Shown here piece after piece: positions 4,478 through 28,366 of a stretch of DNA of 28,530 nucleotides. The position numbers and the translations under genes are program-made. This stretch comes from Macrostomum lignano (taxonomy: Eukaryota), in the NCBI GenBank assembly GCA_002269645.1, contig NIVC01005014.1:27799-56328 (forward strand), in the 5' to 3' direction. Position 1 is the stretch's first letter. Each line of letters opens with the position of its first letter. A model generated the notes under the pieces. The model saw only the letters and a program-made list of their open reading frames with translations. It was not told where the DNA came from and searched no databases.

Positions 4478-4910
4478 CCAGCCTCTCAGATCCTCAGTTG
4501 CTGGGCAAGCCTCCCAGATCTTCAGTTTCTGATCCAGCCTCCCAGAGTGTCAGTTGCTGGGCCAGCCTCCCAGATCGTCAGTTGCTGGGCCAGCCTCCCA
4601 GATCCTCAGTTGCTGGGCCAGCCTCCCAGAGTGTCAGTTGCTGGGCCAGCCTCCCAGATCGTCAGTTGCTGGGCCAGCCTCCCAGAGTGTCAGTTGCTGG
4701 GCCAGCCTCCCAGATCCTCAGTTGCTGGGCCAGCCTCCCAAATCCTCAGTTGCTGGGCCAGCCTCCCAGAGTGTCAGTTGCTGGGCCAGCCTCCCAGATC
4801 GTCAGTTGCTGGGCCAGCCTCCCAGAGTGTCAGTTGCTGGGCCAGCCTCCCAGATCCTCAGTTGCTGGGCCAGCCTCCCAGGTCCTCAGTTGCTGGGCCT
4901 CCACAGATCC
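4478..4910. repeat. 28-bp minisatellite (CAGTTGCTGGGCCAGCCTCCCAGAkysT)
   Basis: About 15 tandem units, ending ~25 nt before the inferred IMPAD1 acceptor. Confidence 0.95.
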
Positions 4911-8754: not shown

Positions 8755-9597
8755 TGGTATCGTGCAAGTGGATGTAGGTGTCTTGTAGGTAGTGTAGGTG
8801 TCTTGTAAGTGGGTGTAGGTGTCTTTTAGGTGGGTGGTAGGTGTCTTTTAGGTGGGTGGTAGGTGTCTTGTAAGTGGGTGTGGATGTCTTGTAAGTGGGT
8901 GTAGGTGTCTTGTAAGTGGGTGTAGGTGTCTTGTAAGTGGGTGTGGGTGTCTTGTAAGTGGGTGTAGGTGTCTTTTAGGTGGGTGGTAGGTGTCTTGTAA
9001 GTGGGTGTGGGTGTCTTGTAAGTGGGTGGTAGGTGTCTTGTAAGTGGGTGTGGGTGTCTTGTAAGTGGATGTAGGTGTCTTTTAAGTGGGTGTGGGTGTC
9101 TTGTAAGTGGGTGTAGGTGTCTTGTAAGTGGGTGTGGGTGTCTTGTAAGTGGGTGTGGATGTCTTGTAAGTGGGTGTAGGTGTCTTGTAGGTGGGTGGTA
9201 GGTGTCTTGTAAGTGAGTGTGGGTGTCTTGTAAGTGGCTGTAGGTGTCTTGTAAGTGGCTGTAGGTGTCTTGTAAATGGCTGTAGGTGTCTTGTAAATGG
9301 CTGTAGGTGTCTTGTAAGTGGCTGTAGGTGTCTTGTAAATGGCTGTAGGTGTCTTGTAAGTGGCTGAAGGTGTCTTGTAAGTGGCTGAAGGTGTCTTGTA
9401 AGTGGCTGTAGGTGTCTTGTAAGTGGCTGTAGGTGTCTTGTAAATGGCTGTAGGTGTCTTGTATATGGCTGTAGGTGTCTTGTAAGTGGCTGTAGGTGTC
9501 TTGTAAGTGGCTGTAGGTGTCTTGTAAGTGGCTGAAGGTGTCTTGTAAGTGGCTGAAGGTGTCTTGTAAGTGGCTGAAGGTGTCTTGTAAGTGGTTT
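8755..9597. repeat. ~21-bp G/T-rich minisatellite (GTAGGTGTCTTGTAAGTGGsT)
   Basis: About 40 tandem units between IMPAD1 and PIGL. Confidence 0.95.
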
Positions 9598-9728: not shown

Positions 9729-11288
9729 CCGTCGCATCTGACGCTGTCAATTCTGTTAATATCTCTCACAGTACTGATTGTTGCAGTCTACCTGATAGCT
9801 TGTCGTTTGAGTAACAATTGCTTGCTGCGACTTGGCAACCAGCTAATTGGCTTGAGAGACCCGGTGAGGAGGTTTTTTATTTATCTGATATGGCCTTTTC
9901 TGTCGGCAAGAGTTCTCGAGGGTTTGTCACCCTCTCAGATTCTCAAACAGAGTCTGACACCCTCTCAGATTCTCAAACAGAGTCTGACACCCTCTCAGAT
10001 TCTCAAACAGAGTCTGACACCCTCTCAGATTCTCAAACAGAGTCTGACACCCTCTCAGATTCTCAAACAGAGTCTGACACCCTCTCAGATTCTCAAACAG
10101 AGTCTGACACCCTCTCAGATTCTCAAACAGAGTCTGACACCCTCTCAGATTCTAAAACAGAGTCTGACACCCTCTCAGATTCTCAAACAGAGTCTGACAC
10201 CCTCTCAGATTCTAAAACAGAGTCTGACACCCTCTCAGATTCTAAAACAGAGTCTGACACCCTCTCAGATCATCAAACAGAGTCTGACACCCTCTCAGAT
10301 CATCAAACAGAGTCTGACACCCTCTTGCATCCTCAAACTGAGTCTGACACCCTCTCAGATTCTAAAACAGAGTCTGACACCCTCAGATTCTAAAACAGAG
10401 TCTGACACCCTCTCAGATTCTCAAACAGAGTCTGACACCTCTCAGATTCTTAAACAGAGTCTGACACCCTCTCAGATTCTCAAACAGAGTCTGACACCTC
10501 TCAGATTCTTAAAACAGAGTCTGACACCTCTCAGATTCTAAAACAGAGTCTGACACCGTCTCAGACTCTCAAACAGAGTCTGACACCCTCTCAGATTCTT
10601 AAACAGAGTCTGACACCCTCTCAGATTCTCAAACAGAGTCTGACACCCTCTCAGATTCTTAAACAGAGTCTGACACCCTCTCAGATTCTTAAACAGAGTC
10701 TGACACCCTCTCAGATTCTCAAACAGAGTCTGACACCCTTTTTCGCACAGAGCGCAGCCACATCTGAACAGTCGCCTCTCCGGTTGCTATTGGTTACCGC
10801 TCATCCGGACGACGAATGCATGTTCTTTGCGCCTCTATTGTTGGCCCTATCCGCCCAGTCTGAGTCGCCTAGCAACCATCGTTGGGAACTGTATCTGGCC
10901 TGCTTATCCACCGGCAATTATTACGGACTTGGCGATATTCGCGTGTCCGAGCTGACACTCGCTTGGACCGAAGGGTTCGGACAGTCGGTCAATAGGCTTC
11001 GAATAGTGAACGATTCTAGACTTCCGGATAGCAACTCGATTGATTGGCAGGCGGCTCATATTGACGATTGCGTATCTGGACTGATTGACGAGTGGCAGAT
11101 TGACTGCTTAGCCACCTTTGACAGCGGCGGGGTGAGCGGCCACGCCAATCACAGGGCTTTGCAACGCTGGGCTCTGAGCCGCTGCGCCAGCCACCGACTG
11201 CGTCGGGATAGGCCTGTGCCTGTGCTGCTGCTGAGGACTGTCGGACTGGCTAGGAAGTATTCGGGTGAGCTGACTGTCTGTGTGTCAC

Positions 11289-11320
<32 letters not shown>

Positions 11321-11557
11321 TTGTGTGTCTGTCTGTCTGTTTGACTGTCTGTCTGTCTGTCTCTTAATGTCTATCTGACTGTCTGTCTGTTTTTCATGTC
11401 TGTCTGTCTGTCTGTCTGTTATGTGTGTCTGTCTGTCTCTTAATGTCTATCTGACGGTCTGTCTGTTTATCTGTCTGTCTGTCTGTCTGTCTGGTGTCTG
11501 TCCGTCTGGCTGTCTGTTCTGTCTCTCTGTCTGTCTGCCTGTCTGTCTGTCTTTGTG

Positions 11558-11594
<37 letters not shown>

Positions 11595-11986
11595 TAGTGT
11601 ATGTCTCCGTCTGTCTGCCTGCTTCTCTCTTGCTGTCCATTCTTTATGCTTGTCCGTGTTTCTCTGTCTGTCTGTCAATCAAGCGGCCGCTCTCACAACG
11701 CAGACACATCGTAGCCTAACCGAGCGCCACTCTTTTCGTTCACAAACGCCTTGCAGGTGTCCTGGCCATCCTGCCGGCCCTGCTGGAGCATTCTCTGTCG
11801 CATTCGGACCCCTCGCCGGCGACGGCCCTCTTCGTCACGCTTCCCAGCCGCCTCCTGACGCCGCTGCGCTGCATGCGGCACCACCTCAGCCAGCTGGTCT
11901 GGTTCCGCTATCTCTACTGCCTGTTCTCCAGCTACCTGTTGATTAATACGTTCGAAATTTATGGTCTCCATGGCAACGTTAACTAA
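9729..11986 (+). CDS. PIGL: GlcNAc-PI de-N-acetylase. Exons 9729-9863, 10751-11264, 11757-11986 (~293 aa). No genomic ATG at the start.
   Basis: Motifs LLVTAHPDDECMFFAP, CLSTGN, TFDSGGVSGHANH and RKY, plus C-terminal MRHHLSQLVWFRYLYCLFSSYLLINTF, all matching the PIG-L family. Exon 1 (missed by the ORF track) encodes a TM anchor, LTLSILLISLTVLIVAVYLIAC. Donors GTGAGG 9864 (phase 0) and GTGAGC 11265 (phase 1); acceptors CAG 10750 and CAG 11756; stop TAA 11984-11986. Confidence 0.9.
9928..10738. repeat. 30-bp minisatellite (CCCTCTCAGATTCTCAAACAGAGTCTGACA) in PIGL intron 1
   Basis: About 27 units, each with an imperfect internal palindrome TCAGATTC...GAGTCTGA. Confidence 0.95.
11272..11677 (+). 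repeat. Degenerate (TCTG)n microsatellite in PIGL intron 2
   Basis: Seen directly. Confidence 0.95.
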
Positions 11987-12393
11987 TATTAGTAGTAGCC
12001 CTAGTAACCATGGCGACAAGGCGACTCGAAAAGCCGCGCACGAAGCGTTCGTCTCGGGTCACGGCGGATGCAGTCTGGTGGAAATCTGGCTGCATCTCAC
12101 CCTGCCCTGTCTGCTGCTGGCGCTGACCGCTCAGCTGCGATGCTGTTGCCATGGCAACAGTCGTCTGTTGCGTCTGATTGGCTGGCTTGAAGCCGGTCTT
12201 CTCTGCTGCTCGGCGGTGCTGCAGCTGACAGTCCTGGCCGATCACGTGACCGAACTGGTCTGCGCCGCTGCCGCCTGCCTGCTGCTGCTGCTGCCCTTCG
12301 CTCAGCGGAACAACTTTGACTTTGTTGTCGAGCCGCCCCAGCCCAGGCCGCTGTTCAAGGAATTCCAGGTGCGTGACAGACAGACAGACACAC

Positions 12394-12436
<43 letters not shown>

Positions 12437-12439
12437 CAA

Positions 12440-12520
<81 letters not shown>

Positions 12521-12755
12521 AAGACAGACAGACACAGACAGGCAGACAGATAGACAGACAGACAGACAGGCAGACAGATAGACAGACAGACAGACAGACA
12601 GACACAGACAGGCAGACACAGACAGGCAGACACAGACAGACAGACAGACAGACAGACACAGACAGGCAGACACAGACAGGCAGACACAGACAGGCAGACA
12701 CAGACAGGCAGAAACAGACAGGCAGACACAGACAGGCAGACACAGACAGGCAGAC

Positions 12756-12810
<55 letters not shown>

Positions 12811-12823
12811 CAGACAGGCAGAC

Positions 12824-12854
<31 letters not shown>

Positions 12855-15800
12855 TAGACAGACAGACAGACAGGCAGACAGATAGACAGACAGACAGACA
12901 GACAGACACAGACAGGCAGACAGATAGACAGACAGACACAGACAGACAGAGGGACAGACAGACAGACAGGCAGACAGATAGACAGACAGACACAGACAGA
13001 CAGACAGACAGACAGATAGACAAGCAAATAGACAGACGGACAGACAGACGCACACTTCGCCCCAAGCACACAGATTCATCAAGAAAAGAGGTTACACGGA
13101 CAGTCCCCGCCCACCCTTCATTCCGCAGGCCCTCCTGCTGCTGCAGACATCCGTCGCCATTCTGGCCGTGGATTTCCCGGCCATGCCCCGCCGCTTGGCC
13201 AAGGCCGAGTCCGCCGGCGTCGGTCTCATGGACGTCGGCGCTCCGGCGTTTGCCTTCGCCAGCGGCTTGCTGGCGCCGGCGCCGACTCCGTTTTCAATGT
13301 CGCGATGGCGCCGATCCCTGGTTGGCGCCTGTCTGCCGCTGGCGCTGCTCGGACTGGCGAGGACTCTGGCTGTGAAGGCTTCGGATTATCAGGTAATATC
13401 CTGGGATCTTTTAAAGGGATTTTTCTATTCGAGGATTTTTGCTTGAGATTTGGATTTCTAATCTTGCGAATATTTTTGGGAATTTCCATCTTAGGGAAAT
13501 TTTGGGGATTTCCCATTTAAGGGATATTTTGGAAGATTTTTTCTTATTGGGGATTTCTCATCCTTAAGATATTTGGGGATTTCTCATCTTGGGGATATTT
13601 TTGGGGATTTTTCATCTGGGGGATCTTATTGGGGAATTCTCATCTTGGGGATATCTACAGGTATATCTATTAGGGATTTTTATGCTAATGATCTTGTTTG
13701 GAATTTTACATACATTCGAGGCGTTTTATTCCGAGGATGTTGTTGTGGATGAAGGCTAACAACCCCGCCTCCAACCAAACAATCCACGACACGCAGGAGC
13801 ACGTCACCGAGTATGGAGTGCACTGGAACTTCTTCATCACCCTGGCCTGTCTCCGAGCGGTCTGGCCTGCGCTGTCCGGCCGGCCGGGGCTCTGGTCGCT
13901 GGTTCTCGCCGCCGGACACTGCCTCCTGGTGCTGCCGTTCGGTGGGGCCGAGTTTCTTTTGGCTAGCGGCGATCGGCACCTGTTGTGGCCGCTGGTGGCC
14001 AACAAGGAGGGCCTGATGTCGCTGCCGCCCTACTGCGCCATCTATTGCGCCGGCGCCGCTATTGGTCGACGATTGCGCGTCGGAACTGAGTCGACTGCTG
14101 CAGGTGCGACGGGTTTCATTGCTAGGCTAGTATCTCTAGCGTGTCTAGAGATTGAGATCTTTCGACATCGTAAGACTGAGATCTTACTCTATGCGCAGCG
14201 TGTCTATAGACCATGCTCTATATAGCGTGTCTAAAGACCCGGATCTATATAGTATATCTATAGATTGGGATCTATATAGTGTATCTATACTCTATAGACT
14301 GGAATCAATATATGGCGTGTCTATAGACTGGGATCTATGTAGTGTATCTATAGACTGGGATCTATGTAGTGTATCTATAGACTGGGATCTATGTAGTGTA
14401 TCTATAGACTGGGATCTATGTAGTGTATCTATAGACTGGGATCTATGTAGTGTATCTATAGACTGGGATCTATGTAGTGTATCTATAGACTGGGATCTAT
14501 GTAGTGTATCTATAGACTGGGATCTATACAACAAAACAACAGAGTACGCTGCCGGGTCGTAAAAAGCAACGTCAGATGGCACGCTTCGAAGCTTGGGCGC
14601 AAACAAAGGCCGCACCGCCGGCAGAGTCCGGGGCGCCGGCGTCAGCCAGCAGACAGTCGACGTAGCGCCGTGTCCTCGCTTGTCCCCGCCGGTAGGGTGC
14701 CTGCAACGTAAGTAGCAGCACCTCCTGCACCGGCTCCGGACAGTAGGCCTCGGCGCGGATGACGTGGCCTGCCAGCTGGAGTCGCCAACGGCGCAGCAGA
14801 TCGCTAGGACGGGCCAGGCCGGCGCGATGGTAGAGCGCCATGTTGGTGACTCGCTCGTTGCCGATCTTGAAGGCGGCGCGCAGCAGGCCAGCGTGCGCCG
14901 CGTCGACTTGAGCCTCGAGCGAGTCTGTCAGCGTCCAGGTCTCGGCGTTGTATAACAGGACGGTTTCGATCACCGCCTGGAACAGCGCCGCCCTCTGGCG
15001 GTCCGGTAGGGCCTCGGACTGCAGGACTGACCTTATAGAACGAAAGGCAGCCCAGGCAAGTCCTCGGCGACGCCGCAGATCCTCGCGAACGTCGGGAACC
15101 AGACCGCCGAGGTAGACGAACTGCTGACATCTTGGAAGCTCACTCGCCTGTCCGTCAGCGCCTCGGCAGAAGATTGCAACCTCGGTGTCGTCCGGCACGC
15201 ATAGCACGACGGTCTTCTGCGTGTTGACCACCAGGCCGACGCTCGCCGCAACGGCAACCAGCCTATCCAGCTGTCGTTGGGCGCCCTCGACGGTCGAGGA
15301 CAGCAGGGCGAGGTCATCGGCGTAGCCAAGCACGCTGAGCCGTGTCTCCGGTTGGCGTCGACCCACGCGTCGCCGCAGCAGGAAGCCGTCGTCGTTGGAA
15401 GGCAGAGCAGTCCGTAGCACCCAGTCAAGCACCAGAATAATAGCGTCTATGTAGTGTATCTATGTAGTGGATCTATGTAGTGTATCTATAGACTGGGATC
15501 TATGTAGTGTATCTATAGACTGGGATCTATCTATATATAGCGCGTGTTTAGACTGGGATCTATTTATATATGGCGTTTTTTATACTCTAGGATCTATATG
15601 ACGTGTTTATAGACTGGGATCTCTATAGCGTTTCTATAGACTATGATCAATGTTGTCTATAAACAATCAATTTTTGTATTAGGATGTCTATATCATACGA
15701 TCTATAGTGATCTATAGCACAAGTTTCTGAAATAAACTAACAGTTAACCGCTACAATAGAATTATTCAATCCTCTCGTCATCCCAGACGCCAACCGCCTG

Positions 15801-16247
15801 ATCTCGTGGCCCCTGCTACTGCTAGCCATCGTGGCCCTGCCATGGGCCCTGACTGTGGCCTCTGTCAAGTTGCCGCCTATCGTAACTGAGCCTTCTCGGC
15901 TTCTGTTCAATGCCGGATTCCTGATCACCTGCCTAGCCGCCTGCTGTCAGGTGCTGTTGATGCTCACCATCGGCCGGCTGCTCTGCCTCGGCTCCATCGA
16001 TCGGTCGTGTTCGCCTGTGCTAGCTCTGATTGGCCGGTGTAGTCTGGCTTATTTCCTATTGGCTAATCTGCTTACGGGAGCCGTTAATCTGACTGTAGAT
16101 ACTGTGGCAATTAGCGACAAATTAGTTGCTATGGGGATTTTGATTGTTTACCTAATCTGTCTGGTTGGCTCGTTACCGTTGCTGTCTATGGTAATTGGGG
16201 CTTGGCAACAGCGTGGCCTTGCTGGGTCGCGCAGCAAGGCGGAGTGA
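11961..16247 (+). CDS. PIGW: GPI inositol acyltransferase (GWT1/PIG-W). Exons 11961-12368, 13129-13392, 13797-14103, 15787-16247 (~479 aa).
   Basis: Motifs HEAFVSG...LVEI, AILAVDFPAMPRRLAKAE..GVGLMDVG, YQ|EHVTEYGVHWNFFITL, NKEGLMSLPPY.AI, PSRLLFN and YFLLANLLTGAVNL. GT-AG introns 12369-13128, 13393-13796 (both phase 0) and 14104-15786 (phase 1) keep the frame. The start codon is uncertain (11961, 11970, or 12010 with an indel). AATAAA at 16893 and 16902. Confidence 0.9.
12375..13055 (+). repeat. Degenerate (CAGA)n microsatellite in PIGW intron 1
   Basis: Seen directly; it is the reverse complement of the 11272-11677 array. Confidence 0.95.
13401..13680. repeat. Degenerate TTGGGGATTTT-type repeat in PIGW intron 2
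   Basis: Recurrent GGGAT(T/A)TTT cores with irregular spacing. Confidence 0.7.
14130..15715. repeat. 27-bp minisatellite (TAGTGTATCTATAGACTGGGATCTATG) in PIGW intron 3, interrupted by the RTE-like fragment
   Basis: Units on both sides of 14529-15441, degenerating outwards. Confidence 0.9.
14529..15441 (-). mobile_element. 5'-truncated non-LTR retrotransposon (RTE-like), C-terminal half of the reverse transcriptase plus a short 3' tail
   Basis: Uninterrupted minus-strand frame IILVLDWVLR...LGYADDLALL...QQFVYLGG...DLRRRRGLAWAAF...VLLYNAETWTLT...LAGHVIR, ending in a stop at 14572. GC-rich island with sharp borders inside an AT-richer minisatellite. Minus-strand 3' end TGTTGTTTTGTTG. No clear TSD. 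Confidence 0.85.
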
Positions 16248-16371
16248 ACACCTCGTAAAATATGATGCACTGTTTTTTACAGTGGAACTCCTTGTTGCTT
16301 TTTTGACTCTTGATAATTCTCTTCTAAAAATTTCCCTAACTATAAAACTATCAGTCCAAGGGGGACCCAAA

Positions 16372-16845
16372 ATCATTTCTAGGATCGGACAAAATTACTT
16401 CTAGGATGAGTCATAATCATTTCTAGGGTGAGACAAAATCATTTCTAGGATGAGTCATAATCATTTCTAGGGTGAGACAAAATCATTTCTAGGATGAGTC
16501 ATAATCATTTCTAGGATGAGACAAAATCATTTCTAGGGTGAGACAAAATCAATTCTAGGGTGAGACAAAATCATTTCTAGGATGAGACATAATCATTTCT
16601 AGGGTGAGACAAAATCATTTCTAGGATGAGTCATAATCATTTCTAGGATGAGACAAAATCATTTCTAGGGTGAGACAAAATCAATTCTAGGGTGAGACAA
16701 AATCATTTCTAGGATGAGACATAATCATTTCTAGGGTGAGACAAAATCATTTCTAGGATGAGACAAAATCATTTCTAGGATGAGACAAAATCATTTCTAG
16801 TGTGAGGCAAAATCATTTCTACGGTGAACTAAAATCATTTTAGAG
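16372..16845. repeat. 22-bp minisatellite (GAGACAAAATCATTTCTAGGrT) downstream of the PIGW stop
   Basis: Tandem units. The rare variant AATCAATT recurs at a 132-bp offset, implying a 6-unit block duplication. Confidence 0.95.
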
Positions 16846-17189
16846 GGTGCCAAATAATCATCTATTCGATCGCTATGATTAACAGGTTAACTAATAAAAA
16901 CAATAAAAGTGCTTTCATACATGCACAATTAGCAGCTTATTTTGTTTTTGTTCCAATAGTTTCTGTTAGTCTTTTTTTGATTTCCACCGGCACAAAATAC
17001 TGTTCTTTTCTATTCGCAAAATCGTAAACCGAAATACACTGATGATAAGTTTTGTCATTTGTCAAGCGTAGCATTAAAAATGCTTGCATTTGTTTTTGCT
17101 GAAGCAGTGAAACAATTTACGACGTATTCTGTTTGAAATTTACTTGGCTTGCTTTGTTTTGGCTAAATATTTCAACAACCAGAAGAAAA

Positions 17190-18030
17190 TCATTCACCAT
17201 TGCACTTTCACATCATTCACCAATGCACTTTCACATCATTCACCATTGCACTTTCACATCATTCACCATTGCACTTTCACATCATTCACCATTGCACTTT
17301 CACATCATTCACCAATGCACTTTCACATCATTCACCATTGCACTTTCACATCATTCACCATTGCACTTTCACATCATTCACCATTGCACTTTCACATCAT
17401 TCACCAATGCACTTTCACATCATTCACCATTGCACTTTCACATCATTCACCAATGCACTTTCACATCATTCACCATTGCACTTTCACATCATTCACCATT
17501 GTACTGTCACATCATTCACCATTGCACTTTCACATCATTCACCATTGCACTTTCACATCATTCACCAATGCACTTTCACATCATTCACCAATGCACTTTC
17601 ACATCATTCACCATTGCACTTTCACATCATTCACCATTGCACTTTCACATCATTCACCAATGCACTTTCACATCATTCACCATTGCACTTTCACATCATT
17701 CACCATTGCACTTTCACATCATTCACCATTGCACTGTCACATCATTCACCATTGCAATGTCACATCATTCACCATTGCACTGTCACATCATTCACCATTG
17801 CACTGTCACATCATTCACCATTGCACTGTCACATCACTCATCATTGCACTGTCACATCATTCACCATTGCACTTTCAAATCATTCACCATTGCAGTCTGT
17901 CACATAATTCACCATCACACTGTCAAATTCACCAATAGATTGCTACACAATTCACCATCACACTGTCACATTCACCAATAGATTGCTACATAATTCACCA
18001 TCACACTATTCACCAAAACAAGTGCAACAT
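17190..18030. repeat. 23-bp minisatellite (CATTGCACTTTCACATCATTCAC)
   Basis: About 35 tandem units; explains the His-rich ORFs in all three frames. Confidence 0.95.
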
Positions 18031-18747: not shown

Positions 18748-20235
18748 GCAGATATGGAATCTTGCGATATAGATATGGAATCTTGCGATATAGATATGGA
18801 ATCTTGCGATATAGATATAGAATCTTGCGATATAGATATGGAATCTTGCGATATAGATATGGAATCTTGCGATATAGATATGGAATCTTGCGATATAGAT
18901 ATGGAATCTTGCGATATAGATATAGAATCTTGCGATATAGATATGGAATCTTGCGATATGGATATGGAATCTTGCGATATAGATATGGAATCTTGCAAAT
19001 AGATATGGAATCTTGCGTTATAGATATAGAATCTTGCGATATAGATATGGAATCATGCGATATAGATATGGAATCTTGCGTTATAGATATGGAATCTTGC
19101 AATATAGATATGGAATCTTGCGTTATAGATTTGGAATCTTGCAATATAGATATGGAATCTTGCGATATAGATATGGAATCTTTAATTGCGATATAGATAT
19201 GGAATCTTGCGATATGGATATGGAATCTTGCGATATAGATATGGAATCTTGCTATATATAGAATCCTGCGATATAGATATATAGAATCATGCGATATAGA
19301 TATGGAATCTTGTGATATAGATATGGAATCTTGCGATATAGATTTGGAATCTTGCGATATAGATATGGAATCTTGCGATATAGATATGTAATCTTGCGAT
19401 ATAGATATGGAATCTTGCGATATAGATATGGAATCTTGCGATATAGATATGGAATCTTGCGATATAGATATGGAATCTTGCGATATAGATTAGAATCTTG
19501 CGATATAGATATGGAATCTTGCGATATAGATATAGAATCTTGCGATATAGATATGGAATCTTGCGATATAGATATGGAATCTTGCGATATAGATATGGAA
19601 TCTTGCGTTATAGATATGGAATCTTGCGATATAGATATGGAATCTTGCGATATAGATATGGAATCTTGCGATATAGATATGGAATCTTGCGATATAGATA
19701 TGGAATCTTGCGATATAGATATGGAATCTTGCGATATAGATATGGAATCTTGCGATATAGATATATAATCATGCGATATAGATATGGAATCTTGCGATAT
19801 AGATATGGAATCTTGCGATATAGATATAGAATCTTGCAATATAGATTTGAAATCTTGCGATATAGATATATAATCATGCGATATAGATATGGAATCTTGC
19901 GATATAGATATGGAATCTTGCGATATAGATATAGAATCTTGCGATATAGATTTGAAATCTTGCGATATAGATATGGAATCTTGCGATATAGATTTGAAAT
20001 CTTGCGATATAGATTTGAAATCTTGCGATATAGATTTGAAATCTTGCGATATAGATTTGAAATCTTGCGATATAGATATGGAATCTTGCGATATAGATAT
20101 GGAATCTTGCGATATAGATATGGAATCTTGCGATATAGATATAGAATCTTGCGATATGGATATGGAATCTTTAATTGCGATATAGATATACATATAGAAT
20201 CTTTGAATATTGAAATATATCGAATCTTGCGAATG
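18748..20235. repeat. 21-bp minisatellite (GATATAGATATGGAATCTTGC)
   Basis: About 70 units, within the putative first intron of the Arg-rich gene. Confidence 0.95.
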
Positions 20236-20842
20236 ACTGCGGGCTAGGAGAGGAAAGAAGAGAAAAGGGAGAAGGGAGAGAGGAGATAGAGAGAAGAGAG
20301 GGGAGGAGAGTAGAAGAAAGAAGAGAGCTGAGAAGAGACCATCAGACTTGAGCGAAAAAACCTTCACGCGCGGGAGTTTGCCAACCCTTGCCTAAAATTG
20401 ACCCGGAGCCAGCAAGTATAGGCAAGCGGAGACACTGGTACAAAACGCATGCGGGTACTTTCTCATCGCCAGGCAAGTATTGTATACAAACTTCAGACCA
20501 GTTGTCGTCCAAGAGGCCTAGTGAAAATACTATATATGCCTATCAAGCCTAAGGTGCCCACTAAAGCTGGATCCTCTGATCCAGCAACCTTCCTGCAAAA
20601 CTACCTTTTTCCTATGTACTAAAAATGAGTTGTTTGTTTGTACGAAATCGATTTTCTCCTGAATGGCTTGACCGATTTTGTTCGAATTTGCACTGTTCGA
20701 TCAGAAATTTTCCCGGGACGGTACATGTATCTTGGCTAAGAAATTGATAAATGCTAAAGGGATTAAATATTCGAAAAACATGCTTTTTTGCAATACTAAT
20801 CTAAAAGCTGTCAAATTTTCTCAAACTTTTCTCCACTTCCAG

Positions 20843-23800
20843 ATGGTGGACGTCAAGCTGCTGCTGTTGATTACTCTGGTCTTCATGACCAGGAAGACAA
20901 TCGACTGTCACATCGCTGAAGTCGGAGTTAACGCCGGAGATGCCGCTCCTGCTGGACCACAGCCGGGCAGCCGCATCTCTGTGTCGGATGTCGGGAAGAC
21001 TTCGGTAGTGAATGACGCTCGTCAGTCAAGAGTTGATGTGCGAAGGCTCCCACAGAGCAGTCCGCTGTCACGAGAGCGTCGTTCCGTGTCGAACGATCGA
21101 CGCCTGACTAGAGCTTCTGAGCGTCGTTCCGTGTCGAACGACCGACGCCTCTCTAGGGCTTCTGAGCGTCGCGCTGTGTCGACTGACCGACGTCTGACTA
21201 GAGCTGCTGAGCGTCGCGCTGTGTCGACTGACCGTCGTCTGACTAGAGCTGCTAAGCATCGCGCTGTGTCGATGGACCGACGGCTGTCACGAGAGCGTCG
21301 TTCCGTGTCGAACGACCGACGTCTGACTAGGGCTGCTGAGCGTCGCGCAGTGTCGACTGACCGACGTCTGACTAGAGCTGCTGATCGTCGCGCTGTGTCG
21401 ACTGACCGACGTCTGACTAGAGCTGCTGAGCGTCGCGCTGTGTCGACTGACCGACGTCTGACTAGAGCTGCTGAGCGTCGCGTTGTGTCGATGGACCGAC
21501 GGCTGTCACGAGAGCGTCGCTCCGTGTCGAACGACCGACGCCTGACTAGAGCTGCTGAGCGTCGCGCTGTGTCGACTGACCGACGTCTGACTAGAGCTGC
21601 TGAGCGTCGCGCTGTGACGACTGACCGACGGCTGTCACGAGAGCGTCGTTCCGTGTCGAACGACCGACGTCTGACTAGGGCTGCTGAGCGTCGCGCAGTG
21701 TCGACTGACCGACGTCTGACTAGAGCTGCTGAGCGTCGCGCTGTGTCGACTGACCGACGGCTGTCACGAGAGCGTCGTTCTGTGTCGAACGACCGACCTC
21801 TGACTAAGGCTGCTGAGCGTCGCGCTGTGTCGACTGACCGACGTCTGACTAGAGCTGCTGAGCGTCGCGCTGTGTCGACCGACCGACGTCTGACTAGAGC
21901 TGCTGAGCGTCGCGCTGTGTCGATGGACCGACGGCTGTCACGAGAGCGTCGTTCCGTGTCGAACGACCGACGTCTGACTAGAGCTGCTGAGCGTCGCGCT
22001 GTGTCGATGGACCGACGGCTGTCACGAGAGCGTCGCTCCGTGTCGAACGACCGACGCCTGACTAGAGCTGCTGAGCGTCGCGCTGTGTCAACTGACCGAC
22101 GTCTGACTAGAGCTGCTGAGCGTCGCGCTGTGACGACTGACCGACGGCTGACTAGAGCTTCTGAGCGTCGTTCCGTGTCGAACGACCGACGCCTGACTAG
22201 AGCTGCTGAGCGTCGCGCTGTGTCGACTGACCGACGTCTGACTAGAGCTGCTGAGCGTCGCGTTGTGTCGATGGACCGACGGCTGTCACGAGAGCGTCGT
22301 TCCGTGTCGAACGACCGACGCCTAACTAGAGCTGCTGAGCGTCGGGCTGTGTCGACTGACCGACGTCTGACTAGAGCTGCTGAGCGTCGCGCTGTGACGA
22401 CTGACCGACGGCTGTCACGAGAGCGTCGTTCCGTGTCGAACGACCGACGTCTGACTAGGGCTGCTGATCGTCGCGCTGTGTCGACTGACCGACGTCTGAC
22501 TAGAGCTGCTGAGCGTTGCGCTGTGTCGACTGACCGACGTCTGACTAGAGCTGCTGAGCGTCGCGTTGTGTCGATGGACCGACGGCTGTCACGAGAGCGT
22601 CGTTCCGTGTCGAACGACCGACGCCTGACTAGAGCTGCTGAGCGTCGCGCTGTGTCGACTGACCGACGTCTGACTAGAGCTGCTGAGCGTCGCGCTGTGT
22701 CGATGGACCGACGGCTGTCACGAGAGCGTCGTTCCGTGTCGAACGACCGACGTCTGACTAGGGCTGCTGAGCGTCGCGCTGTGTCGACTGACCGACGTCT
22801 GACTAGAGCTGCTGAGCGTCGCGCTGTGTCGACTGACCGACGGCTGTCACGAGAGCCTCGTTCCGTGTCGAACGACCGAGGTCTGACTAGAGCTGCTGAG
22901 CGTCGCGCAGTGTCGACTGACCGACGTCTGACTAGAGCTGCTGAGCGTCGCGCTGTGTCGATGGACCGACGGCTGTCACGAGAGCGTCGTTCCGTGTCGA
23001 ACGACCGACGTCTGACTAAGGCTGCTGAGCGTCACGCTGTGTCGACTGACCGACGTCTGACTAGAGCTGCTGAGCGTCGCGCTGTCTCGACTGACCGACG
23101 TCTGACTAGAGCTGCTGAGCGTCGCGCTGTGTCGACTGACCGACGGCTGTCACGAGAGCGTCGTTCTGTGTCGACTGACCGACGTCTGACTAGAGCTGCT
23201 GAGCGTCGCGCTGTGTCGATGGACCGACGGCTGTCACGAGAGCGTCGTTCCGTGTCGAACGACCGACGTCTGACTAGAGCTGCTGAGCGTCGCGCTGTGT
23301 CGATGGACCGACGGCTGTCACGAGAGCGTCGCTCCGTGTCGAACGACCGACGCCTGACTAGAGCTGCTGAGCGTCGCGCTGTGACGACTGACCGACGGCT
23401 GACTAGAGCTTCTGAGCGTCGTTCCGTGTCGAACGACCGACGCCTCTCTAGGGCTTCTGTGCGTCGCGCTGTGTCGACTGACCGACGTCTGACTAGAGCT
23501 GCTGAGCGTCGCGTTGTGTCGACTGACCGACGGCTGTCACGAGAGCGTCGTTCCGTGTCGAACAACCGACGTCTGACTAGGGCTGCTGAGCGTCGCGCTG
23601 TGTCGACTGACCGACGTTTGACTAGAGCTGCTGAGCGTCGCGCTGTGTCGACTGACCGACGTCTGACTAGAGCTGCTGAGCGTCGCGCTGTGTCGACTGA
23701 CCGACGGCTGTCACGAGAGCGTCGTTCCGTGTCGACTGACCTGCGTCTGACTAGGGCTGCTGAGCGTCGCGCTGTGTCGACTGACCGACGTCTGACTAGA

Positions 23801-25012
23801 GCTGCTGAGCGTCGCGCTGTGTCGACTGACCGACGTCTGACTAGAGCTGCTGAGCGTCGCGTTGTGTCGATGGACCGACGGCTGTCACGAGAACGTCGTT
23901 CCGTGTCGAACGACCGACGCCTGACTAGGGCTGCTGAGCGTCGAGCTGTGTCGACTGACCGACGTCTGACTAGAGCTGCTGAGCGTCGCGTTGTGTCGAT
24001 GGACCGACGGCTGTCACGAGAACGTCGTTCCGTGTCGAACGACCGACGCCTGACTATGGCTGCGGAGCGAGTCCATTTGTCCAAGCAGTCAAAGCGCGTT
24101 ACCAATTTTGGCTCCCAGCCGGTGCTCAGCACAAAATCATCCAGCACTAAGTTCGACGTCGTTATTGAAGAGCCCTCCGTTCTTAACAGCTCTCGACTCA
24201 TCTCACTTGGCAAACCTGATCATCAGACTGTGTCGCTACCGAGTCAGCCGACCGTCAATTTCGACAAGACCTTGTCCACTTTGCTGGCCTCCGACGAACT
24301 GACCCGTCAAGTGCCGAGCGCTTCACTCAAACAGAAGATTCTGTGGCAGATTGGCTCAGCTGTGGGAGCTGTTTCGAGGTGGGTTTCATTGTGTCATCTT
24401 GTAGGGTGAGATTCAGGAACGCTCATAGGTGAGATTCAGGAACGCTCATAGGTGAGATTCAGAAACGCTCATAGGTGAGATTCAGGAATGCTCATAGGTG
24501 AGATTCAGCAATGCTCATAGGTGAGATTCAGGAATGCTCATAGGTGAGATTCAGGAATCTCATAGGTGAGATTCAGGAATGCTCATAGGTGAGATTCAGG
24601 AATGCTCATATATATGGGATTCAGGAATGGTAATATAAAAGATTCGGGAATGTTTCATATTCTGATATAGGAGATTCAGAAATTCAGATATATGAGAATC
24701 AGGAATCTTCATATATGAGATTCAGGAATGCTGATATATCACGAGTTTCAGGAACGCTCATAGCTGTTATTCTGAATAGGCTCCTGTATCTCATCCTTAT
24801 CTTCTAAGGCTGGAATTGAGACGGGATGTCTAATAAAATTTTGATCGAACTGCTTCAACAAATCTAGAAATACGCATGCAGGCACCGAATAATTTAAGCA
24901 CCCGGTTTCATCTTGCAGCTACTCGGCGGACTTCGCCCAATTTGGAATTGCCGGCGGCGCTGCCCTGGTTGCCATGGCAACCAATCGTCGGGGCAAATCG
25001 GTCCTCTGCTAA
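20843..25012 (+). CDS. Putative secreted or surface Arg-rich tandem-repeat protein (~1,210 aa). Exons 20843-24378 (or -24405) and 24919-25012.
   Basis: A pyrimidine tract and CAG acceptor lie directly before ATG 20843. Signal-peptide-like start MVDVKLLLLITLVFMTRKTIDC. About 3 kb of 45-nt and 39-nt units (RRAVSTDRRLTRAAE / RRSVSNDRR / LSRE) with no stop and many synonymous variants, then a unique C-terminal region. Phase-2 donor to acceptor TTGCAG 24918 gives YSADFAQFGIAGGAALVAMATNRRGKSVLC, stop 25010-25012. Confidence 0.7.
24403..24765. repeat. 23-bp minisatellite (AGGTGAGATTCAGGAATGCTCAT) in the last intron of the Arg-rich gene
   Basis: Tandem units, degenerating towards the 3' end. Confidence 0.9.
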
Positions 25013-25601
25013 TTTTGATAACGATTCTATTCGGTGACCTTAAATGACCTATTGGATTTGAACTGGATTGAGAGGATGAAATGTTTAACCAATTAAAACA
25101 AGTTTATCCAACGAGAGGGTTTATTTTTCATTCAATATCAACAACTTTTTGACGTGCTGCATTATTAAAACAAAAAGCAATATTATCGGCTCTTTTTTAT
25201 TTATTTCGACAGAAAAAACTTGGCTTTTTTGTTACAGTAGAAAAAATGATAGATAAAGAAATATCGATAGTTGATCAGATAAAGTCAACTGTTTGTTAGG
25301 AGACGAAATACAACAACAAATCGCTTTTGTTATACTGGAAGATTTTTTTTGAAATGGCAATGTTACTACTGAGCAAGATAAACAAGTAATGCTTTATGTA
25401 CAGATTTTGAATACAAATTACAAAACCCTTTAAAGTTTAAATGAGAAAAACTGTTAAAAGTACTAATTAAATAAAACTAGAAAAATGTACATGAAAATAC
25501 TTATTGTTATTGAATAATGCAAAGTTACATAAATTTGCTTAGACAAGATATACATTAATGTACATAAATGTTATAGTGAGGTATTTGTGGTGATAGTCAA
25601 G

Positions 25602-28290
25602 GAATTCCTCAGGTAAAACTGTGATTCCCAAATTCCTCAGGTAAAACTCTGATCCCCAAATTCCTCAGGTAAAACGATCTGATCCCCAAATTCCTCAGGT
25701 AAAACTCTGATCCCCAAATTCCTCAGGTAAAACGATCTGATCCCCAAATTCCTCAGGTAAAACGATCTGATCCCCAAATTCCTCAGGTAAAACTCTGATC
25801 CCCAAATTCCTCAGGTAAAACTCTTATCCCCAAATTCCTCAGGTAAAACGATCTGATCCCCAAATTCCTCAGGTAAAACTCTGATCCCCAAATTCCTCAG
25901 GTAAAACTCTTATCCCCAAATTCCTCAGGTAAAACGATCTGATCCCCAAATTCCTCAGGTAAAACTCTGATCCCCCAAATTCCTCAGGTAAAACGATCTG
26001 ATCCCCAAATTCCTCAGGTAAAACGATCTGATCCCCAAATTCCTCAGGTTAAACGATCTGATCCCCAAATTCCTCAGGTAAAACTCTTATCCCCAAATTC
26101 CTCAGGTAAAACGATCTGATCCCCAAATTCCTCAGGTAAAACTCTGATCCCCAAATTCCTCAGGTAAAACGATCTGATCCCCAAATTCCTCAGGTAAAAC
26201 GATCTGATCCCCAAATTCCTCAGGTAAAACTCTGATCCCCCAAATTCCTCAGGTAAAACGATCTGATCCCCAAATTCCTCAGGTAAAACGATCTGATCCC
26301 CAAATTCCTCAGGTTAAACGATCTGATCCCCAAATTCCTCAGGTAAAACTCTTATCCCCAAATTCCTCAGGTAAAACGATCTGATCCCCAAATTCCTCAG
26401 GTAAAACTCTGATCCCCCAAATTCCTCAGGTAAAACGATCTGATCCCCAAATTCCTCAGGTAAAACGATCTGATCCCCAAATTCCTCAGGTAAAACGATC
26501 TGATGCCCAAATTCCTCAGGTAAAACGATCTGATGCCCAAATTCCTCAGGTAAAACTCTGATCCCCCAAATTCCTCAGGTAAAACGATCTGATCCCCAAA
26601 TTCCTCATGTAAAACTCTGATCCCCAAATTCCTCAGGTAAAACTCTGATCCCCAAATTCCTCAGGTAAAACTCTGATCCCCAAATTCCTCAGGTAAAACG
26701 ATCTGATCCCCAAATTCCTCAGGTAAAACGATCTGATCCCCAAATTCCTCATGTAAAACTCTGATCCCCAAATTCCTCAGGTAAAACTCTGATCCCCAAA
26801 TTCCTCAGGTAAAACTCTGATCCCCCAAATTCCTCAGGTAAAACTCTGATCCCCAAATTCCTCAGGTAAAACTCTGATCCCCAAATTCCTCAGGTAAAAC
26901 TCTTATCCCCAAATTCCTCAGGTAAAACGATCTGATCCCCAAATTCCTCAGGTAAAACTCTGATCCCCCAAATTCCTCAGGTAAAACGATCTGATCCCCA
27001 AATTCCTCAGGTAAAACGATCTGATCCCCAAATTCCTCAGGTAAAACGATCTGATCCCCAAATTCCTCAGGTAAAACGATCTGATCCCCAAATTCCTCAG
27101 GTAAAACTCTGATCCCCCAAATTCCTCAGGTAAAACGATCTGATCCCCAAATTCCTCATGTAAAACTCTGATCCCCAAATTCCTCAGGTAAAACTCTGAT
27201 CCCCAAATTCCTCAGGTAAAACTCTGATCCCCAAATTCCTCAGGTAAAACGATCTGATCCCAAATTCCTCAGGTAAAACGATCTGATCCCCAAATTCCTC
27301 ATGTAAAACTCTGATCCCCAAATTCCTCAGGTAAAACTCTGATCCCCAAATTCCTCAGGTAAAACTCTTATCCCCAAATTCCTCAGGTAAAACGATCTGA
27401 TCCCCAAATTCCTCAGGTAAAACTCTGATCCCCCAAATTCCTCAGGTAAAACGATCTGATCCCCAAATTCCTCAGGTAAAACGATCTGATCCCCAAATTC
27501 CTCAGGTAAAACTCTGATCCCCAAATTCCTCAGGTAAAACGATCTGATCCCCAAATTCCTCAGGTAAAACACTGATCCCCAAATTCCTCAGGTAAAACTC
27601 TGATCCCCCAAATTCCTCAGGTAAAACTCTGATCCCCCAAATTCCTCAGGTAAAAATCTGATCCCAAATTCCTCAGGTAAAACTCTGATCCCCAAATTCC
27701 TCAGGTAAAACTCTGATCCCCAAATTCCTCAGGTAAAACTCTGATCCCCAAGTTCCTCAAATAAAACTCTGATCCCCAAATTCCTCAGGTAAAACTCTGA
27801 TCCCCCAAGTTCCTCAAATAAAACTCTGATCCCCAAATTCCTCAGGTAAAACTCTGATCCCCCAAATTCCTCATGTAAAACTTTGATCCCCAAATTCCTC
27901 AGGTAAAACTCTTATCCCCAAATTCCTCAGGTAAAACTCTGATCCCCAAATTCCTCAGGTAAAATGATCTGATCCCCAAATTCCTCAGGTAAACTCTGAT
28001 CCCCAAATTCCTCAGGTAAAACTCTGATCCCCAAGTTCCTCAGGTAAAACTCTGATCCCCAAATTCCTCAGGTAAAACTCTGATCCCCAAATTCCTCAGG
28101 TAAAACTCTTATCCCCAAATTCCTCAGGTAAAACTCTGATCCCCAAATTCCTCAGGTAAAACTCTGATCCCAAGTTCCTCAAATAAAACTCTGATCCCCA
28201 AATTCCTCAGGTAAAACAATCTGATCCCCAAATTCCTCAGGTTAAACTCTGATCCCCAATTCCTCAGGTAAAACTCTGATCCCCAAATTC
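25602..28290. repeat. 28/30-bp satellite (GATCCCCAAATTCCTCAGGTAAAAC[TCT/GATCT]) with a higher-order duplication
   Basis: About 90 units. Identical minus-strand ORFs at 26397 and 26948 mark a 551-bp block duplication. Confidence 0.95.
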
Positions 28291-28366
28291 CCCTGCTGAA
28301 CGTTAAATTCTGATCCTAAAAATTAGTCACAATTGATTAAGATATAATTACCTACTTAGCTAATAT

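What the first reader, a model, noticed from the sequence alone, without database searches (positions are those of the whole stretch)
20843..24405. Uncharacterised ~1,200-aa signal-peptide protein made of ~70 Arg-rich 13/15-residue repeats
Seen: modules RRAVSTD, RRLTRAAE, RRSVSND, RRAVSMD and RRLSRE are shuffled in frame over ~3 kb. About one third of residues are Arg, net charge is about +3 per 15-mer, and the repeats have essentially no Cys, Gly, Pro or aromatic residues. RR occurs every 6-8 residues, and RERR recurs. Established: RR and RxRR are convertase/furin sites, S-x-E is the Fam20C secretory-kinase motif, and cationic or phosphoserine-rich repeat proteins form invertebrate glues and secretory granules. 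Inference: either a phosphorylated polyampholyte for adhesive, mucus, rhabdite or egg-shell material, or a polyprotein releasing many short peptides (LTRAAE, AVSTD, SVSND, LSRE). I do not recognise the family.
Basis: partly seen in the sequence, partly recalled or inferred. Interest (0 to 1): 0.7.

Follow-up and report, generated by a model that had tools for sequence, protein, structure and literature searches.

The report
Orphan flatworm arginine-repeat membrane/secretory protein gene
This is a real but uncharacterised gene of the flatworm Macrostomum lignano, built from a 3-kb in-frame minisatellite, that encodes a 1,209-residue, extremely positively charged repeat protein with a signal peptide and a membrane anchor; it has no relatives anywhere else and its function is still a matter of inference.

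Summary
The window is the end of Macrostomum lignano contig NIVC01005014.1. An ORF starts at ATG 20843, directly after a TTCCAG spliced-leader-type acceptor. It runs through 69 in-frame units (50 of 45 nt, 19 of 39 nt; 21074-24064). A GT-AG intron (24379-24918) then joins it to a short exon ending at 25012. The product is 1,209 aa with 28.8% Arg and net charge +212. It has an N-terminal signal peptide and a C-terminal hydrophobic anchor. RNA-seq-based GenBank models (BOX15_Mlig000613g3/g4 and an N-terminal fragment) cover both ends and confirm the splice junction, but nobody has annotated the full length. Two large protein-collection searches, Pfam and PDB find no relatives beyond M. lignano fragments. 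The case for coding therefore rests on gene structure, transcript models and a modest synonymous excess. AlphaFold predicts the array as one long amphipathic helix with an arginine face. Nineteen furin-type RERR sites lie one per higher-order repeat. Best reading: a secretory-pathway polycation that binds polyanions, probably after convertase cleavage into 28-88-aa cationic peptides. Function is untested.

The parts
20837..20842 (+). Splice acceptor TTCCAG immediately before the ATG; a candidate spliced-leader trans-splice site
   Evidence: Sequence reads CTCCACTTCCAG|ATGGTG. This matches the M. lignano SL acceptor motif [T/C]TNCAG reported in PMC8629364. SL use at this site is inferred, not shown.
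20843..20908 (+). Start codon and predicted signal peptide (aa 1-22, MVDVKLLLLITLVFMTRKTIDC)
   Evidence: This is the highest Kyte-Doolittle 15-residue window of the protein, 2.31. AlphaFold models it as a helix, residues 2-27. The annotated fragment P0004 starts with exactly this Met. The cleavage position is a guess.
20909..21073 (+). Unique N-terminal region (aa 23-77). It ends in PLSR; with the ERR that opens the first unit (from 21074) this forms the first furin-type RERR site
   Evidence: Translation. Low AlphaFold confidence, pLDDT 47-59.
21074..24064 (+). Coding minisatellite: 69 in-frame units (50 x 45 nt, 19 x 39 nt) in 19 higher-order blocks. Encodes 997 aa, 33.6% Arg, net charge +203
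   Evidence: No stop in 997 codons although 279 codons are one substitution from a stop. Synonymous variants are in excess among units: 20 of 42 variants against 30.5% expected, p = 0.015. Both sampled stretches of the array (its first ~100 and last ~130 residues) are predicted as one continuous helix, pLDDT 90-98.
24065..24378 (+). Unique Ser/Thr/Pro-rich C-terminal part of exon 1 (aa 1075-1178 plus 2 nt). It contains the protein's only N-x-S/T sequon
   Evidence: Translation. Identical in P0002. Low AlphaFold confidence.
24379..24918 (+). GT-AG intron (AG|GTGGGT ... TCTTGCAG|C) containing a 23-bp minisatellite at 24405-24610
   Evidence: Sequence and TRF. The junction ...GAVS|SYSADF... is present in the annotated proteins P0002 and P0007; P0003 keeps only the exon-2 side (YSADF...), being frameshifted before it.
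24919..25012 (+). Exon 2: hydrophobic anchor FAQFGIAGGAALVAMAT (24932-24982), basic tail NRRGKSVLC and stop codon
   Evidence: Kyte-Doolittle 15-residue window of 1.62, the second-highest peak in the protein after the signal peptide. An alternative tail caused by a 1-nt deletion at 24981 is seen in two other contigs.

Best explanation
The region is a genuine two-exon protein-coding gene of the free-living flatworm Macrostomum lignano (transcript cluster Mlig000613). Most of its coding sequence is an expanded in-frame minisatellite.

Shown:
- The organism and the contig.
- The exon-intron structure.
- The 69-unit array and its higher-order organisation.
- The composition of the product.
- The absence of any relative outside M. 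lignano.

Inferred:
- The mRNA probably starts by spliced-leader trans-splicing at 20842/20843.
- The signal peptide takes the protein into the ER.
- The C-terminal hydrophobic segment, followed by a basic tail, holds it in the membrane as a type I protein.
- The roughly 1,000-residue array is a polycation (+203) that can form an amphipathic helix carrying five arginines per unit on one face.
- It therefore acts by electrostatic binding of polyanions, such as acidic or sulphated glycans of mucus or secretory granules, microbial surfaces or nucleic acids.
- Each higher-order block ends in a near-ideal furin site, R-E-R-R|S-V (19 sites). A furin-like convertase in the late secretory pathway therefore most likely cuts the precursor into about 18 cationic peptides of 28-88 residues (commonly 43 or 58), plus a 58-residue N-terminal propiece, leaving a 147-residue membrane stub.

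The gene would thus be a multi-copy factory for Arg-rich helical polycations.
For: Identity:
- The claudin-like ORF of the window lies on three contigs of GCA_002269645.1. L003 (NIVC01005014.1) is 100% identical to the window, which maps to its last 28,530 nt.
- Hits are named Macrostomum lignano.
- NIVC is the Mlig_3_7 assembly, whose annotation is built from RNA-seq (PMC5730564).

Gene structure:
- The ATG lies directly after TTCCAG, matching the SL acceptor motif.
- The annotated fragment P0004 has the same start and the first 7 units.
- P0002 (PAA51429.1) and P0007 (PAA52941.1) contain the last units, the unique region and the spliced exon 2.

Coding signal:
- Only 45- and 39-nt units occur.
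- There are 0 stops in 997 codons.
- Synonymous variants are in excess (p = 0.015; dN/dS about 0.5).

Product features:
- Hydropathy peaks occur only at the two ends.
- Net charge is +212, with 19 RERR sites, and the helical hydrophobic moment peaks at 100 degrees (0.57-0.66).
- AlphaFold gives a single helix at pLDDT 90-98 for both ends of the array.

Precedent: the same animal uses extremely cationic K/R-rich regions of the secreted protein Mlig-ap1 to bind anionic partners (PMC6410801).
Against: - No expression site, peptide or phenotype is known for this gene.
- The middle of the array has no direct transcript support. The annotated models break off inside it.
- The open frame and the synonymous excess are weak discriminators. 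Neighbouring non-coding arrays are also open, and the antisense frame that shares wobble positions shows the same excess with a single stop.
- The regular RERR spacing could simply be a by-product of amplifying a higher-order repeat that contains a 6-nt-deleted unit.
- The AlphaFold runs used no alignment, and such runs often draw long helices for charged repeats. With +3 per 15 residues and few i/i+4 salt bridges, the free chain may be disordered.
- The hydrophobic anchor is short (17 residues) and rich in Gly and Ala.
- The lack of any homologue means conservation cannot be used as evidence.
Confidence: 0.4

Rival explanations
1. The protein is an intact structural polycation and is not processed. 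It stays full length as a membrane-tethered cationic rod or brush about 150 nm long, or it is shed whole. It would serve as a cohesive or packaging component for anionic secretions (glue, mucus, rhabdite-type granules), much like the K/R-rich regions of Mlig-ap1.
For: - Signal peptide plus anchor, net charge +203, and a continuous predicted helix.
- Mlig-ap1 is a precedent in the same animal.
- A helical conformation, or O-glycosylation of the 20% Ser/Thr, could shield the dibasic sites.
Against: - 19 accessible R-x-R-R|S-V sites and 133 RR pairs would be hard to protect from convertases in the secretory pathway (established furin specificity; counts).
- None of the Cys-rich, lectin, vWD or EGF modules that accompany known flatworm adhesives are present.
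Confidence: 0.3
2. The array is a non-coding GC-rich minisatellite that merely happens to stay in frame. It would lie in a transcribed but untranslated or barely translated young locus, and the ORF would have no function.
For: - The window is about 45% minisatellites, and several are open in 1-3 frames across the whole array.
- The antisense frame has only one stop.
- The synonymous excess is modest and is shared with that antisense frame.
- Two large protein-collection searches find no homologue.
- Other contigs carry frameshifts.
Against: - The ORF begins outside the array with an ATG and a signal peptide at a consensus acceptor.
- It continues for 314 nt of unique sequence and then splices in frame to a hydrophobic anchor and a stop.
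- Two unit lengths occur, and both are multiples of 3.
- None of the 87 CGA codons has become TGA.
- The frameshifts in L005 are 1-2-nt indels with no substitutions, and the same kind of indel occurs in the intron. This is the pattern of assembly error.
Confidence: 0.1
3. Serines in S-x-E/D contexts would be phosphorylated by a secretory kinase, turning the polycation into a self-coacervating polyampholyte for adhesive or granule material.
For: There are 21 S-x-E and 86 S-x-[D/E] sites. Full use of the 86 would remove about 172 of the 203 positive charges. Coacervating cement proteins are known from other marine invertebrates (general knowledge).
Against: The canonical S-x-E motif occurs in the 13-mers, the few -RAS- variant 15-mers and the C-terminal region, only 21 sites in all. 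S-x-D is a poor Fam20C site (general knowledge). No evidence of phosphorylation is available.
Confidence: 0.1
4. Cleavage at every RR would release more than 130 tetra- to hexapeptides (LTRAAE, AVSTD, SVSND, LSRE) that act as signalling peptides.
For: There are 133 RR pairs at 6-8-residue spacing, and the same few peptides recur 18-36 times each.
Against: - There are no Gly-dibasic amidation sites (0).
- The products would be very short, and acidic or neutral.
- A C-terminal membrane anchor is atypical for neuropeptide precursors.
- The repeat is predicted to be helical.
Confidence: 0.05

Closest known systems
Mlig-ap1 K/R-rich regions (adhesive/cohesive protein of M. lignano; Wunderer et al. 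2019, PMC6410801)
   Same: Same animal. Both are secreted, have very long repetitive regions of extreme positive charge, and have no homologues in public databases. The proposed mode of action is also electrostatic interaction with anionic partners.
   Different: - No sequence similarity was detected.
- Mlig-ap1 repeats are Lys/Arg/Pro/Asn-rich (e.g. SRKPRRKNRKSRKP) and flank C-type lectin, vWD and EGF modules. This protein uses almost only Arg, has no known domain and has a C-terminal anchor.
- Expression in the adhesive glands has not been tested.
Furin-processed multi-peptide precursors of immune peptides (e.g. Drosophila Baramicin A; honeybee apidaecin precursors) - recalled from general knowledge
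   Same: Signal peptide, an N-terminal propiece ending in a furin site, then tandem near-identical cationic units each ending in R-x-R-R.
   Different: There is no homology. The units here are Arg-rich and helical, of variable length (28-88 aa), and themselves full of RR pairs. A membrane anchor is present. Neither processing nor antimicrobial activity has been tested.
Long single-alpha-helix / charged helical repeat proteins (ER/K SAH domains, trichohyalin) - general knowledge
   Same: Hundreds of residues of Arg-rich short repeats predicted as one uninterrupted helix.
   Different: Those proteins are cytosolic and nearly charge-balanced, with dense i/i+4 Glu-Arg/Lys salt bridges. This array has net +3 per 15 residues and few such pairs, and it is routed to the secretory pathway.
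Membrane-tethered mucin-type tandem-repeat (VNTR) proteins
   Same: Signal peptide, a huge tandem-repeat ectodomain encoded by a single exon as a coding minisatellite, a juxtamembrane Ser/Thr-rich stalk, a single anchor and a short tail. The array evolves by unequal exchange.
   Different: The repeats have almost no Pro, are 34% Arg and are predicted helical rather than extended and glycosylated. There is no SEA, EGF or other mucin module.

Membership tests
Convertase-processed polyprotein precursor | N-terminal signal peptide | tested here: met
   Hydropathy maximum of 2.31 at residues 1-15, with a 10-residue hydrophobic core. No dedicated signal-peptide predictor was available.
Convertase-processed polyprotein precursor | Tandem peptide units each bounded by dibasic or R-x-[KR]-R sites | tested here: met
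   19 RERR sites, one after each 13-mer and one at the end of the N-terminal region; 133 RR pairs.
Convertase-processed polyprotein precursor | Mature peptides detected; cleavage shown | not testable with these tools
   Needs peptidomics or western blotting.
Amidated neuropeptide precursor | Gly immediately before the basic cleavage site | tested here: not met
   0 G[KR][KR] motifs, and only 1 Gly in the 997-aa array.
Mlig-ap1-type flatworm adhesive protein | Sequence homology, or shared lectin/vWD/EGF modules | tested here: not met
   No Pfam domain. Only self-fragments were found in the protein searches.
Mlig-ap1-type flatworm adhesive protein | Expression in adhesive gland cells and a non-adhesive RNAi phenotype | not testable with these tools
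   No expression data could be retrieved. The gene ID is absent from the searched texts and supplements.
ER/K single alpha-helix domain | Long isolated helix | tested here: inconclusive
   AlphaFold single-sequence models give one helix at pLDDT 90-98. There was no alignment, and pTM is 0.36-0.41.
ER/K single alpha-helix domain | Near charge balance with dense i/i+4 acid-base pairs | tested here: not met
   5 Arg against 2 acidic residues per 15-mer, net +203. Few i/i+4 pairs by inspection of the consensus.
Membrane mucin / VNTR glycoprotein | Pro/Thr/Ser-rich repeats | tested here: not met
   S+T is 20%, but there are only 2 Pro in 997 residues.
Membrane mucin / VNTR glycoprotein | Signal peptide plus a single C-terminal membrane anchor | tested here: inconclusive
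   The hydrophobic segment FAQFGIAGGAALVAMAT is followed by NRRGK. It is short and Gly/Ala-rich, and its AlphaFold confidence is low.
Non-coding minisatellite | No constraint on frame, no gene structure, no transcript model | tested here: not met
   Only 45- and 39-nt units; ATG and signal peptide; in-frame splice; RNA-seq-based models P0002, P0004 and P0007.
Fam20C-type secretory phosphoprotein | Dense S-x-E/pS clusters in an acidic protein | tested here: not met
   21 S-x-E in 1,209 aa; calculated pI about 12.

The most novel reading that the evidence does not exclude
A species- or genus-restricted gene, born by expansion of a GC-rich in-frame minisatellite in a minisatellite-laden genome, encodes a new class of secretory polycation. 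This would be an Arg-faced amphipathic helix about 1,000 residues long (about 150 nm if fully helical), tethered to the membrane. Furin would cut it at higher-order-repeat boundaries into a graded family of Arg-rich helical peptides, used for defence or for condensing anionic secretions such as rhabdite or mucus material.
Probability: 0.2. Interest if true: 0.6.

Novelty: new variant of a known kind. Interest (0 to 1): 0.4.

Why it matters
If the protein is made, it would be one of the most arginine-dense secretory-pathway proteins described, and a clear example of a coding minisatellite giving rise to a lineage-restricted gene. M. lignano is a tractable model with transgenesis, RNAi and in situ hybridisation. 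Charge-based interactions are already central to its adhesion biology, so a second, unrelated polycation could be tested directly. It might bear on mucus or rhabdite composition, surface defence or bioadhesion. It is also a practical warning: the gene is split into 165-204-aa 'hypothetical protein' fragments in GenBank, because short-read transcript assembly and PacBio indel errors break long coding repeats.

Tried and rejected
- Full ORF as an exact product: not on record.
- Homology search with a query that contained 11 repeat units. The 8,000-candidate list was swamped by Arg-rich words and missed even the self-fragments, so it is uninformative. Repeating it with the unique ends only worked.
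- Reaching the copy on the 588-kb contig NIVC01000827.1 through a PIG-W protein anchor. Only a UniRef entry without a contig was returned, so an independent, diverged copy of the array could not be read.
- L004 (NIVC01003432.1). This is a contig end riddled with 1-nt indels, so it is unusable for dN/dS.
- Six-frame synonymous/non-synonymous test to tell the strands apart. It does not discriminate, because the antisense frame shares wobble positions. The strand was decided by splice sites and annotation.
- RNA-structure role. The array folds worse than shuffled sequences (z = +2.0) and the unit is not palindromic (22/45 matches against 21.4 for shuffles). Rejected.
- Rfam and tRNA scans of the window: nothing.
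- Pfam and PDB sequence searches of the repeat and the unique ends: nothing.
- Literature. No paper holds the gene ID or the repeat peptides, and supplements of three M. lignano papers have no entry.
- Egg-shell protein idea. Rejected on composition, since the array has no Tyr or Gly.
- GPI signal. Considered for the C-terminus but thought less likely, because 9 polar/basic residues follow the hydrophobic stretch.
Full report
**Where the window comes from.** The 238-aa claudin-like ORF at 2345-3061 is recorded on three contigs of assembly GCA_002269645.1. One of them, NIVC01005014.1 (56,328 bp), is 100% identical to the window over the 6 kb fetched. The coordinates place the window as the last 28,530 bases of that contig. 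The related proteins found are named Macrostomum lignano, and NIVC is the accession of the Mlig_3_7 assembly of that flatworm (PMC5730564). The other genes in the window are ordinary animal genes:
- an inositol-monophosphatase-family gene;
- PIG-L;
- PIG-W/GWT1;
- a reverse-transcriptase fragment.

About 45% of the window is minisatellite arrays with 21-30-bp units. This fits the paper's remark that the genome is unusually rich in simple repeats.

**Checking the observation.**
- TRF reports a 45-nt array from 21074 to about 24069, with higher-order periods of 129, 174 and 303 nt.
- Read in the frame of the ATG at 20843, the array consists of 69 units from 21074 to 24064. Fifty are 15-mers and 19 are 13-mers.
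- There are three DNA unit types:
  - ERRSVSNDRRLTRAA;
  - ERRAVSTDRRLTRAA;
  - ERRAVSMDRRLSR.
- The units are ordered, not shuffled. There are 19 blocks, each starting with an S-type 15-mer and ending with a 13-mer, followed by one final unit.
- The array is 33.6% Arg and contains one Cys, one Gly, two Pro and no aromatic residue. Its net charge is +203.

**Is it a gene or just a satellite?** An open frame is weak evidence here.
- Several neighbouring non-coding arrays are open across their whole length in one to three frames.
- One antisense frame of this array has a single stop in 997 codons.
- A six-frame test of variants among units shows an excess of synonymous changes in the sense frame, but an equal excess in the antisense frame that shares its wobble positions.

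What does discriminate is the gene structure.
- The frame starts outside the array at an ATG that directly follows TTCCAG. This is a perfect match to the [T/C]TNCAG motif reported for spliced-leader acceptors in this species.
- The first 22 residues are a typical signal peptide.
- The frame runs 314 nt beyond the array through unique sequence.
- A GT-AG intron (24379-24918, itself holding a 23-bp minisatellite) joins it in frame to a 94-nt exon. That exon encodes a 17-residue hydrophobic segment, a basic tail and a stop at 25012.

The transcript evidence comes from the RNA-seq-derived GenBank annotation.
- The spliced junction is present in the GenBank proteins PAA51429.1 (BOX15_Mlig000613g4) and PAA52941.1 (g3, partial).
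- A third model starts at the same Met and reads through the first seven units.
- Both edges of the array are therefore exonic on the + strand.
- The models break inside the array, as expected for short-read assembly, so the middle has no direct support.

Supporting points:
- only 45- and 39-nt units occur;
- none of 279 codons that are one step from a stop (87 of them CGA) has become a stop;
- 20 of 42 distinct variants are synonymous against 30.5% expected (p = 0.015; dN/dS about 0.5).

**Other copies.** Contig NIVC01003160.1 carries the same array with the same unit order. Over the 4.5 kb compared it differs from the window by seven 1-2-nt indels and no substitutions. Such indels also occur in the intron. 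That is the signature of PacBio consensus errors, not of pseudogenisation, and it explains why the ORF looks broken there. Contig NIVC01003432.1 ends inside the array and is full of 1-nt indels. Where it is readable, it has the consensus Arg at positions where the window has the rare P, G, K or H variants. A 1-nt deletion at 24981 is shared by both other contigs and by one UniRef model. It gives an alternative cytoplasmic tail, and it may be a real allele. I could not reach the more diverged copy on the 588-kb contig.

**Relatives.**
- A search of 5.8 billion clustered proteins with the unique ends found only four M. lignano fragments.
- An exhaustive HMMER scan of 1.84 billion representatives found only those same fragments.
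- Pfam and PDB gave nothing.

The gene is therefore an orphan, at least within the searched collections.

**What the protein looks like.** It has 1,209 residues, about 140 kDa, a calculated pI of about 12 and a net charge of +212. AlphaFold, run without an alignment, models the first ~100 and the last ~130 residues of the array as one uninterrupted helix with pLDDT 90-98. The unique N- and C-terminal regions have low confidence. The helical hydrophobic moment of the consensus peaks sharply at 100 degrees (0.57-0.66). On a helix, the five arginines of a unit fall on one face, and Ala, Leu and Val fall on the opposite face. The free chain may nevertheless be disordered, because it carries +3 per 15 residues and has few stabilising salt bridges. 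It may fold only on a polyanion. That is an inference.

Motif counts:

| Motif | Count |
|---|---|
| RR | 133 |
| RERR | 19 |
| S-x-E | 21 |
| S-x-[D/E] | 86 |
| RRx[S/T] | 66 |
| N-glycosylation sequon | 1 |
| Gly-dibasic amidation site | 0 |

The 19 RERR sites fit the furin consensus R-x-[K/R]-R with Ser-Val after the cut. They sit exactly at the end of the N-terminal region and at the end of every higher-order block, except one that has mutated to REPR. Cleavage there would give the following products:
- a 58-residue propiece;
- 18 cationic peptides of 28-88 residues, mostly 43 or 58;
- a 147-residue anchored stub.

**Most likely mechanism.** I commit to a secretory-pathway polycation that works by binding polyanions and is probably cut by a furin-like convertase at the block boundaries. 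The structural facts are shown. Entry into the ER, membrane anchoring, cleavage, helix formation and the polyanion partner are all inferred.

The main rival is the same protein acting intact as a tethered or shed cohesive or packaging component. This would resemble the K/R-rich regions of Mlig-ap1 in the same animal, which bind anionic partners during adhesion (PMC6410801). Mlig-ap1 is not related in sequence and has a different composition and domains.

A purely non-coding satellite is unlikely but not excluded. An RNA-structure role is rejected.

**Novelty and verdict.** The sequence is already in GenBank, but only as fragmentary hypothetical proteins. No paper mentions the gene or its repeats. 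It belongs to the broad, familiar class of lineage-restricted tandem-repeat secretory proteins encoded by coding minisatellites. Its particular combination of features matches no family I could test:
- an almost pure-Arg polycation;
- 13/15-residue units predicted as helical;
- furin sites at higher-order boundaries;
- a signal peptide plus a C-terminal anchor.

I rate it a new variant of a known kind, of moderate interest. The gene is real and odd, and its function is open and readily testable in this model animal.

Noticed in passing
window 4478-28291 (arrays at 4478-4899, 5638-6053, 6622-7273, 8766-9594, 9928-10739, 14203-14527, 16368-16840, 17189-17915, 18750-20171, 24405-24610, 25603-28291): About 45% of the window is minisatellite arrays with 21-30-bp units, mostly in introns or between genes. 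Several are open in 1-3 reading frames over their whole length, so mechanical ORF lists here are full of spurious repeat 'proteins'. The contig ends about 240 nt after the 28-bp array (25603-28291), which is probably why the assembly broke there.
   Followed up: partly
window 10784-11344 (PIG-L) and 13698-14225, 15831-16244 (PIG-W/GWT1): Two enzymes for consecutive steps of GPI-anchor synthesis lie next to each other on the + strand, immediately upstream of the target gene (Pfam PF02585 and PF06423). They could form a spliced-leader-resolved operon. Whether this is linked to the target's hydrophobic C-terminus is unknown.
   Followed up: partly
window 2345-3061: An intron-less claudin/PMP22-family gene (PF13903). 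The identical protein lies on three contigs of the assembly, consistent with the duplicated or redundant state of this genome.
   Followed up: partly
window 4966-5478, 6130-6594, 7482-7757: Exons of an inositol-monophosphatase-family gene (PF00459), with 28-, 22- and 30-bp minisatellites in or beside its introns.
   Followed up: partly
window 14572-15432, minus strand: A 286-aa ORF with a weak reverse-transcriptase match (PF00078, 25.3 bits, below the cutoff). It lies between the two PIG-W exons and is probably a retroelement fragment in the intron.
   Followed up: no
window 11270-11621 and 12375-13049: (CTGT)n and (GACA)n are the same tetranucleotide microsatellite in opposite orientation, flanking about 750 bp. 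This is a potential large inverted repeat.
   Followed up: no
window 24981; L004, L005: A 1-nt deletion (CC to C) is shared by contigs NIVC01003160.1 and NIVC01003432.1 and by UniRef A0A1I8FC25. It changes the C-terminal tail from NRRGKSVLC to IVGANRSSANFDNDSIR and lengthens the hydrophobic segment. It may be a real allele or a systematic error.
   Followed up: partly
window 21074-24064, minus strand: The antisense frame that shares wobble positions with the sense frame has only one stop in 997 codons and would encode a similar Arg-rich repeat (AALVRRRSVDTARRS). Nearly all of it is covered by no ORF that starts with ATG, GTG or TTG. It also has no splice or annotation support.
   Followed up: yes
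L005 (NIVC01003160.1) against window 20600-25100: Two contigs of the public assembly carry the same allele and differ only by 1-2-nt indels (no substitutions in 4.5 kb). These indels break the ORF and, together with short-read transcript assembly, explain why the gene is annotated only as 165-204-aa fragments.
   Followed up: yes
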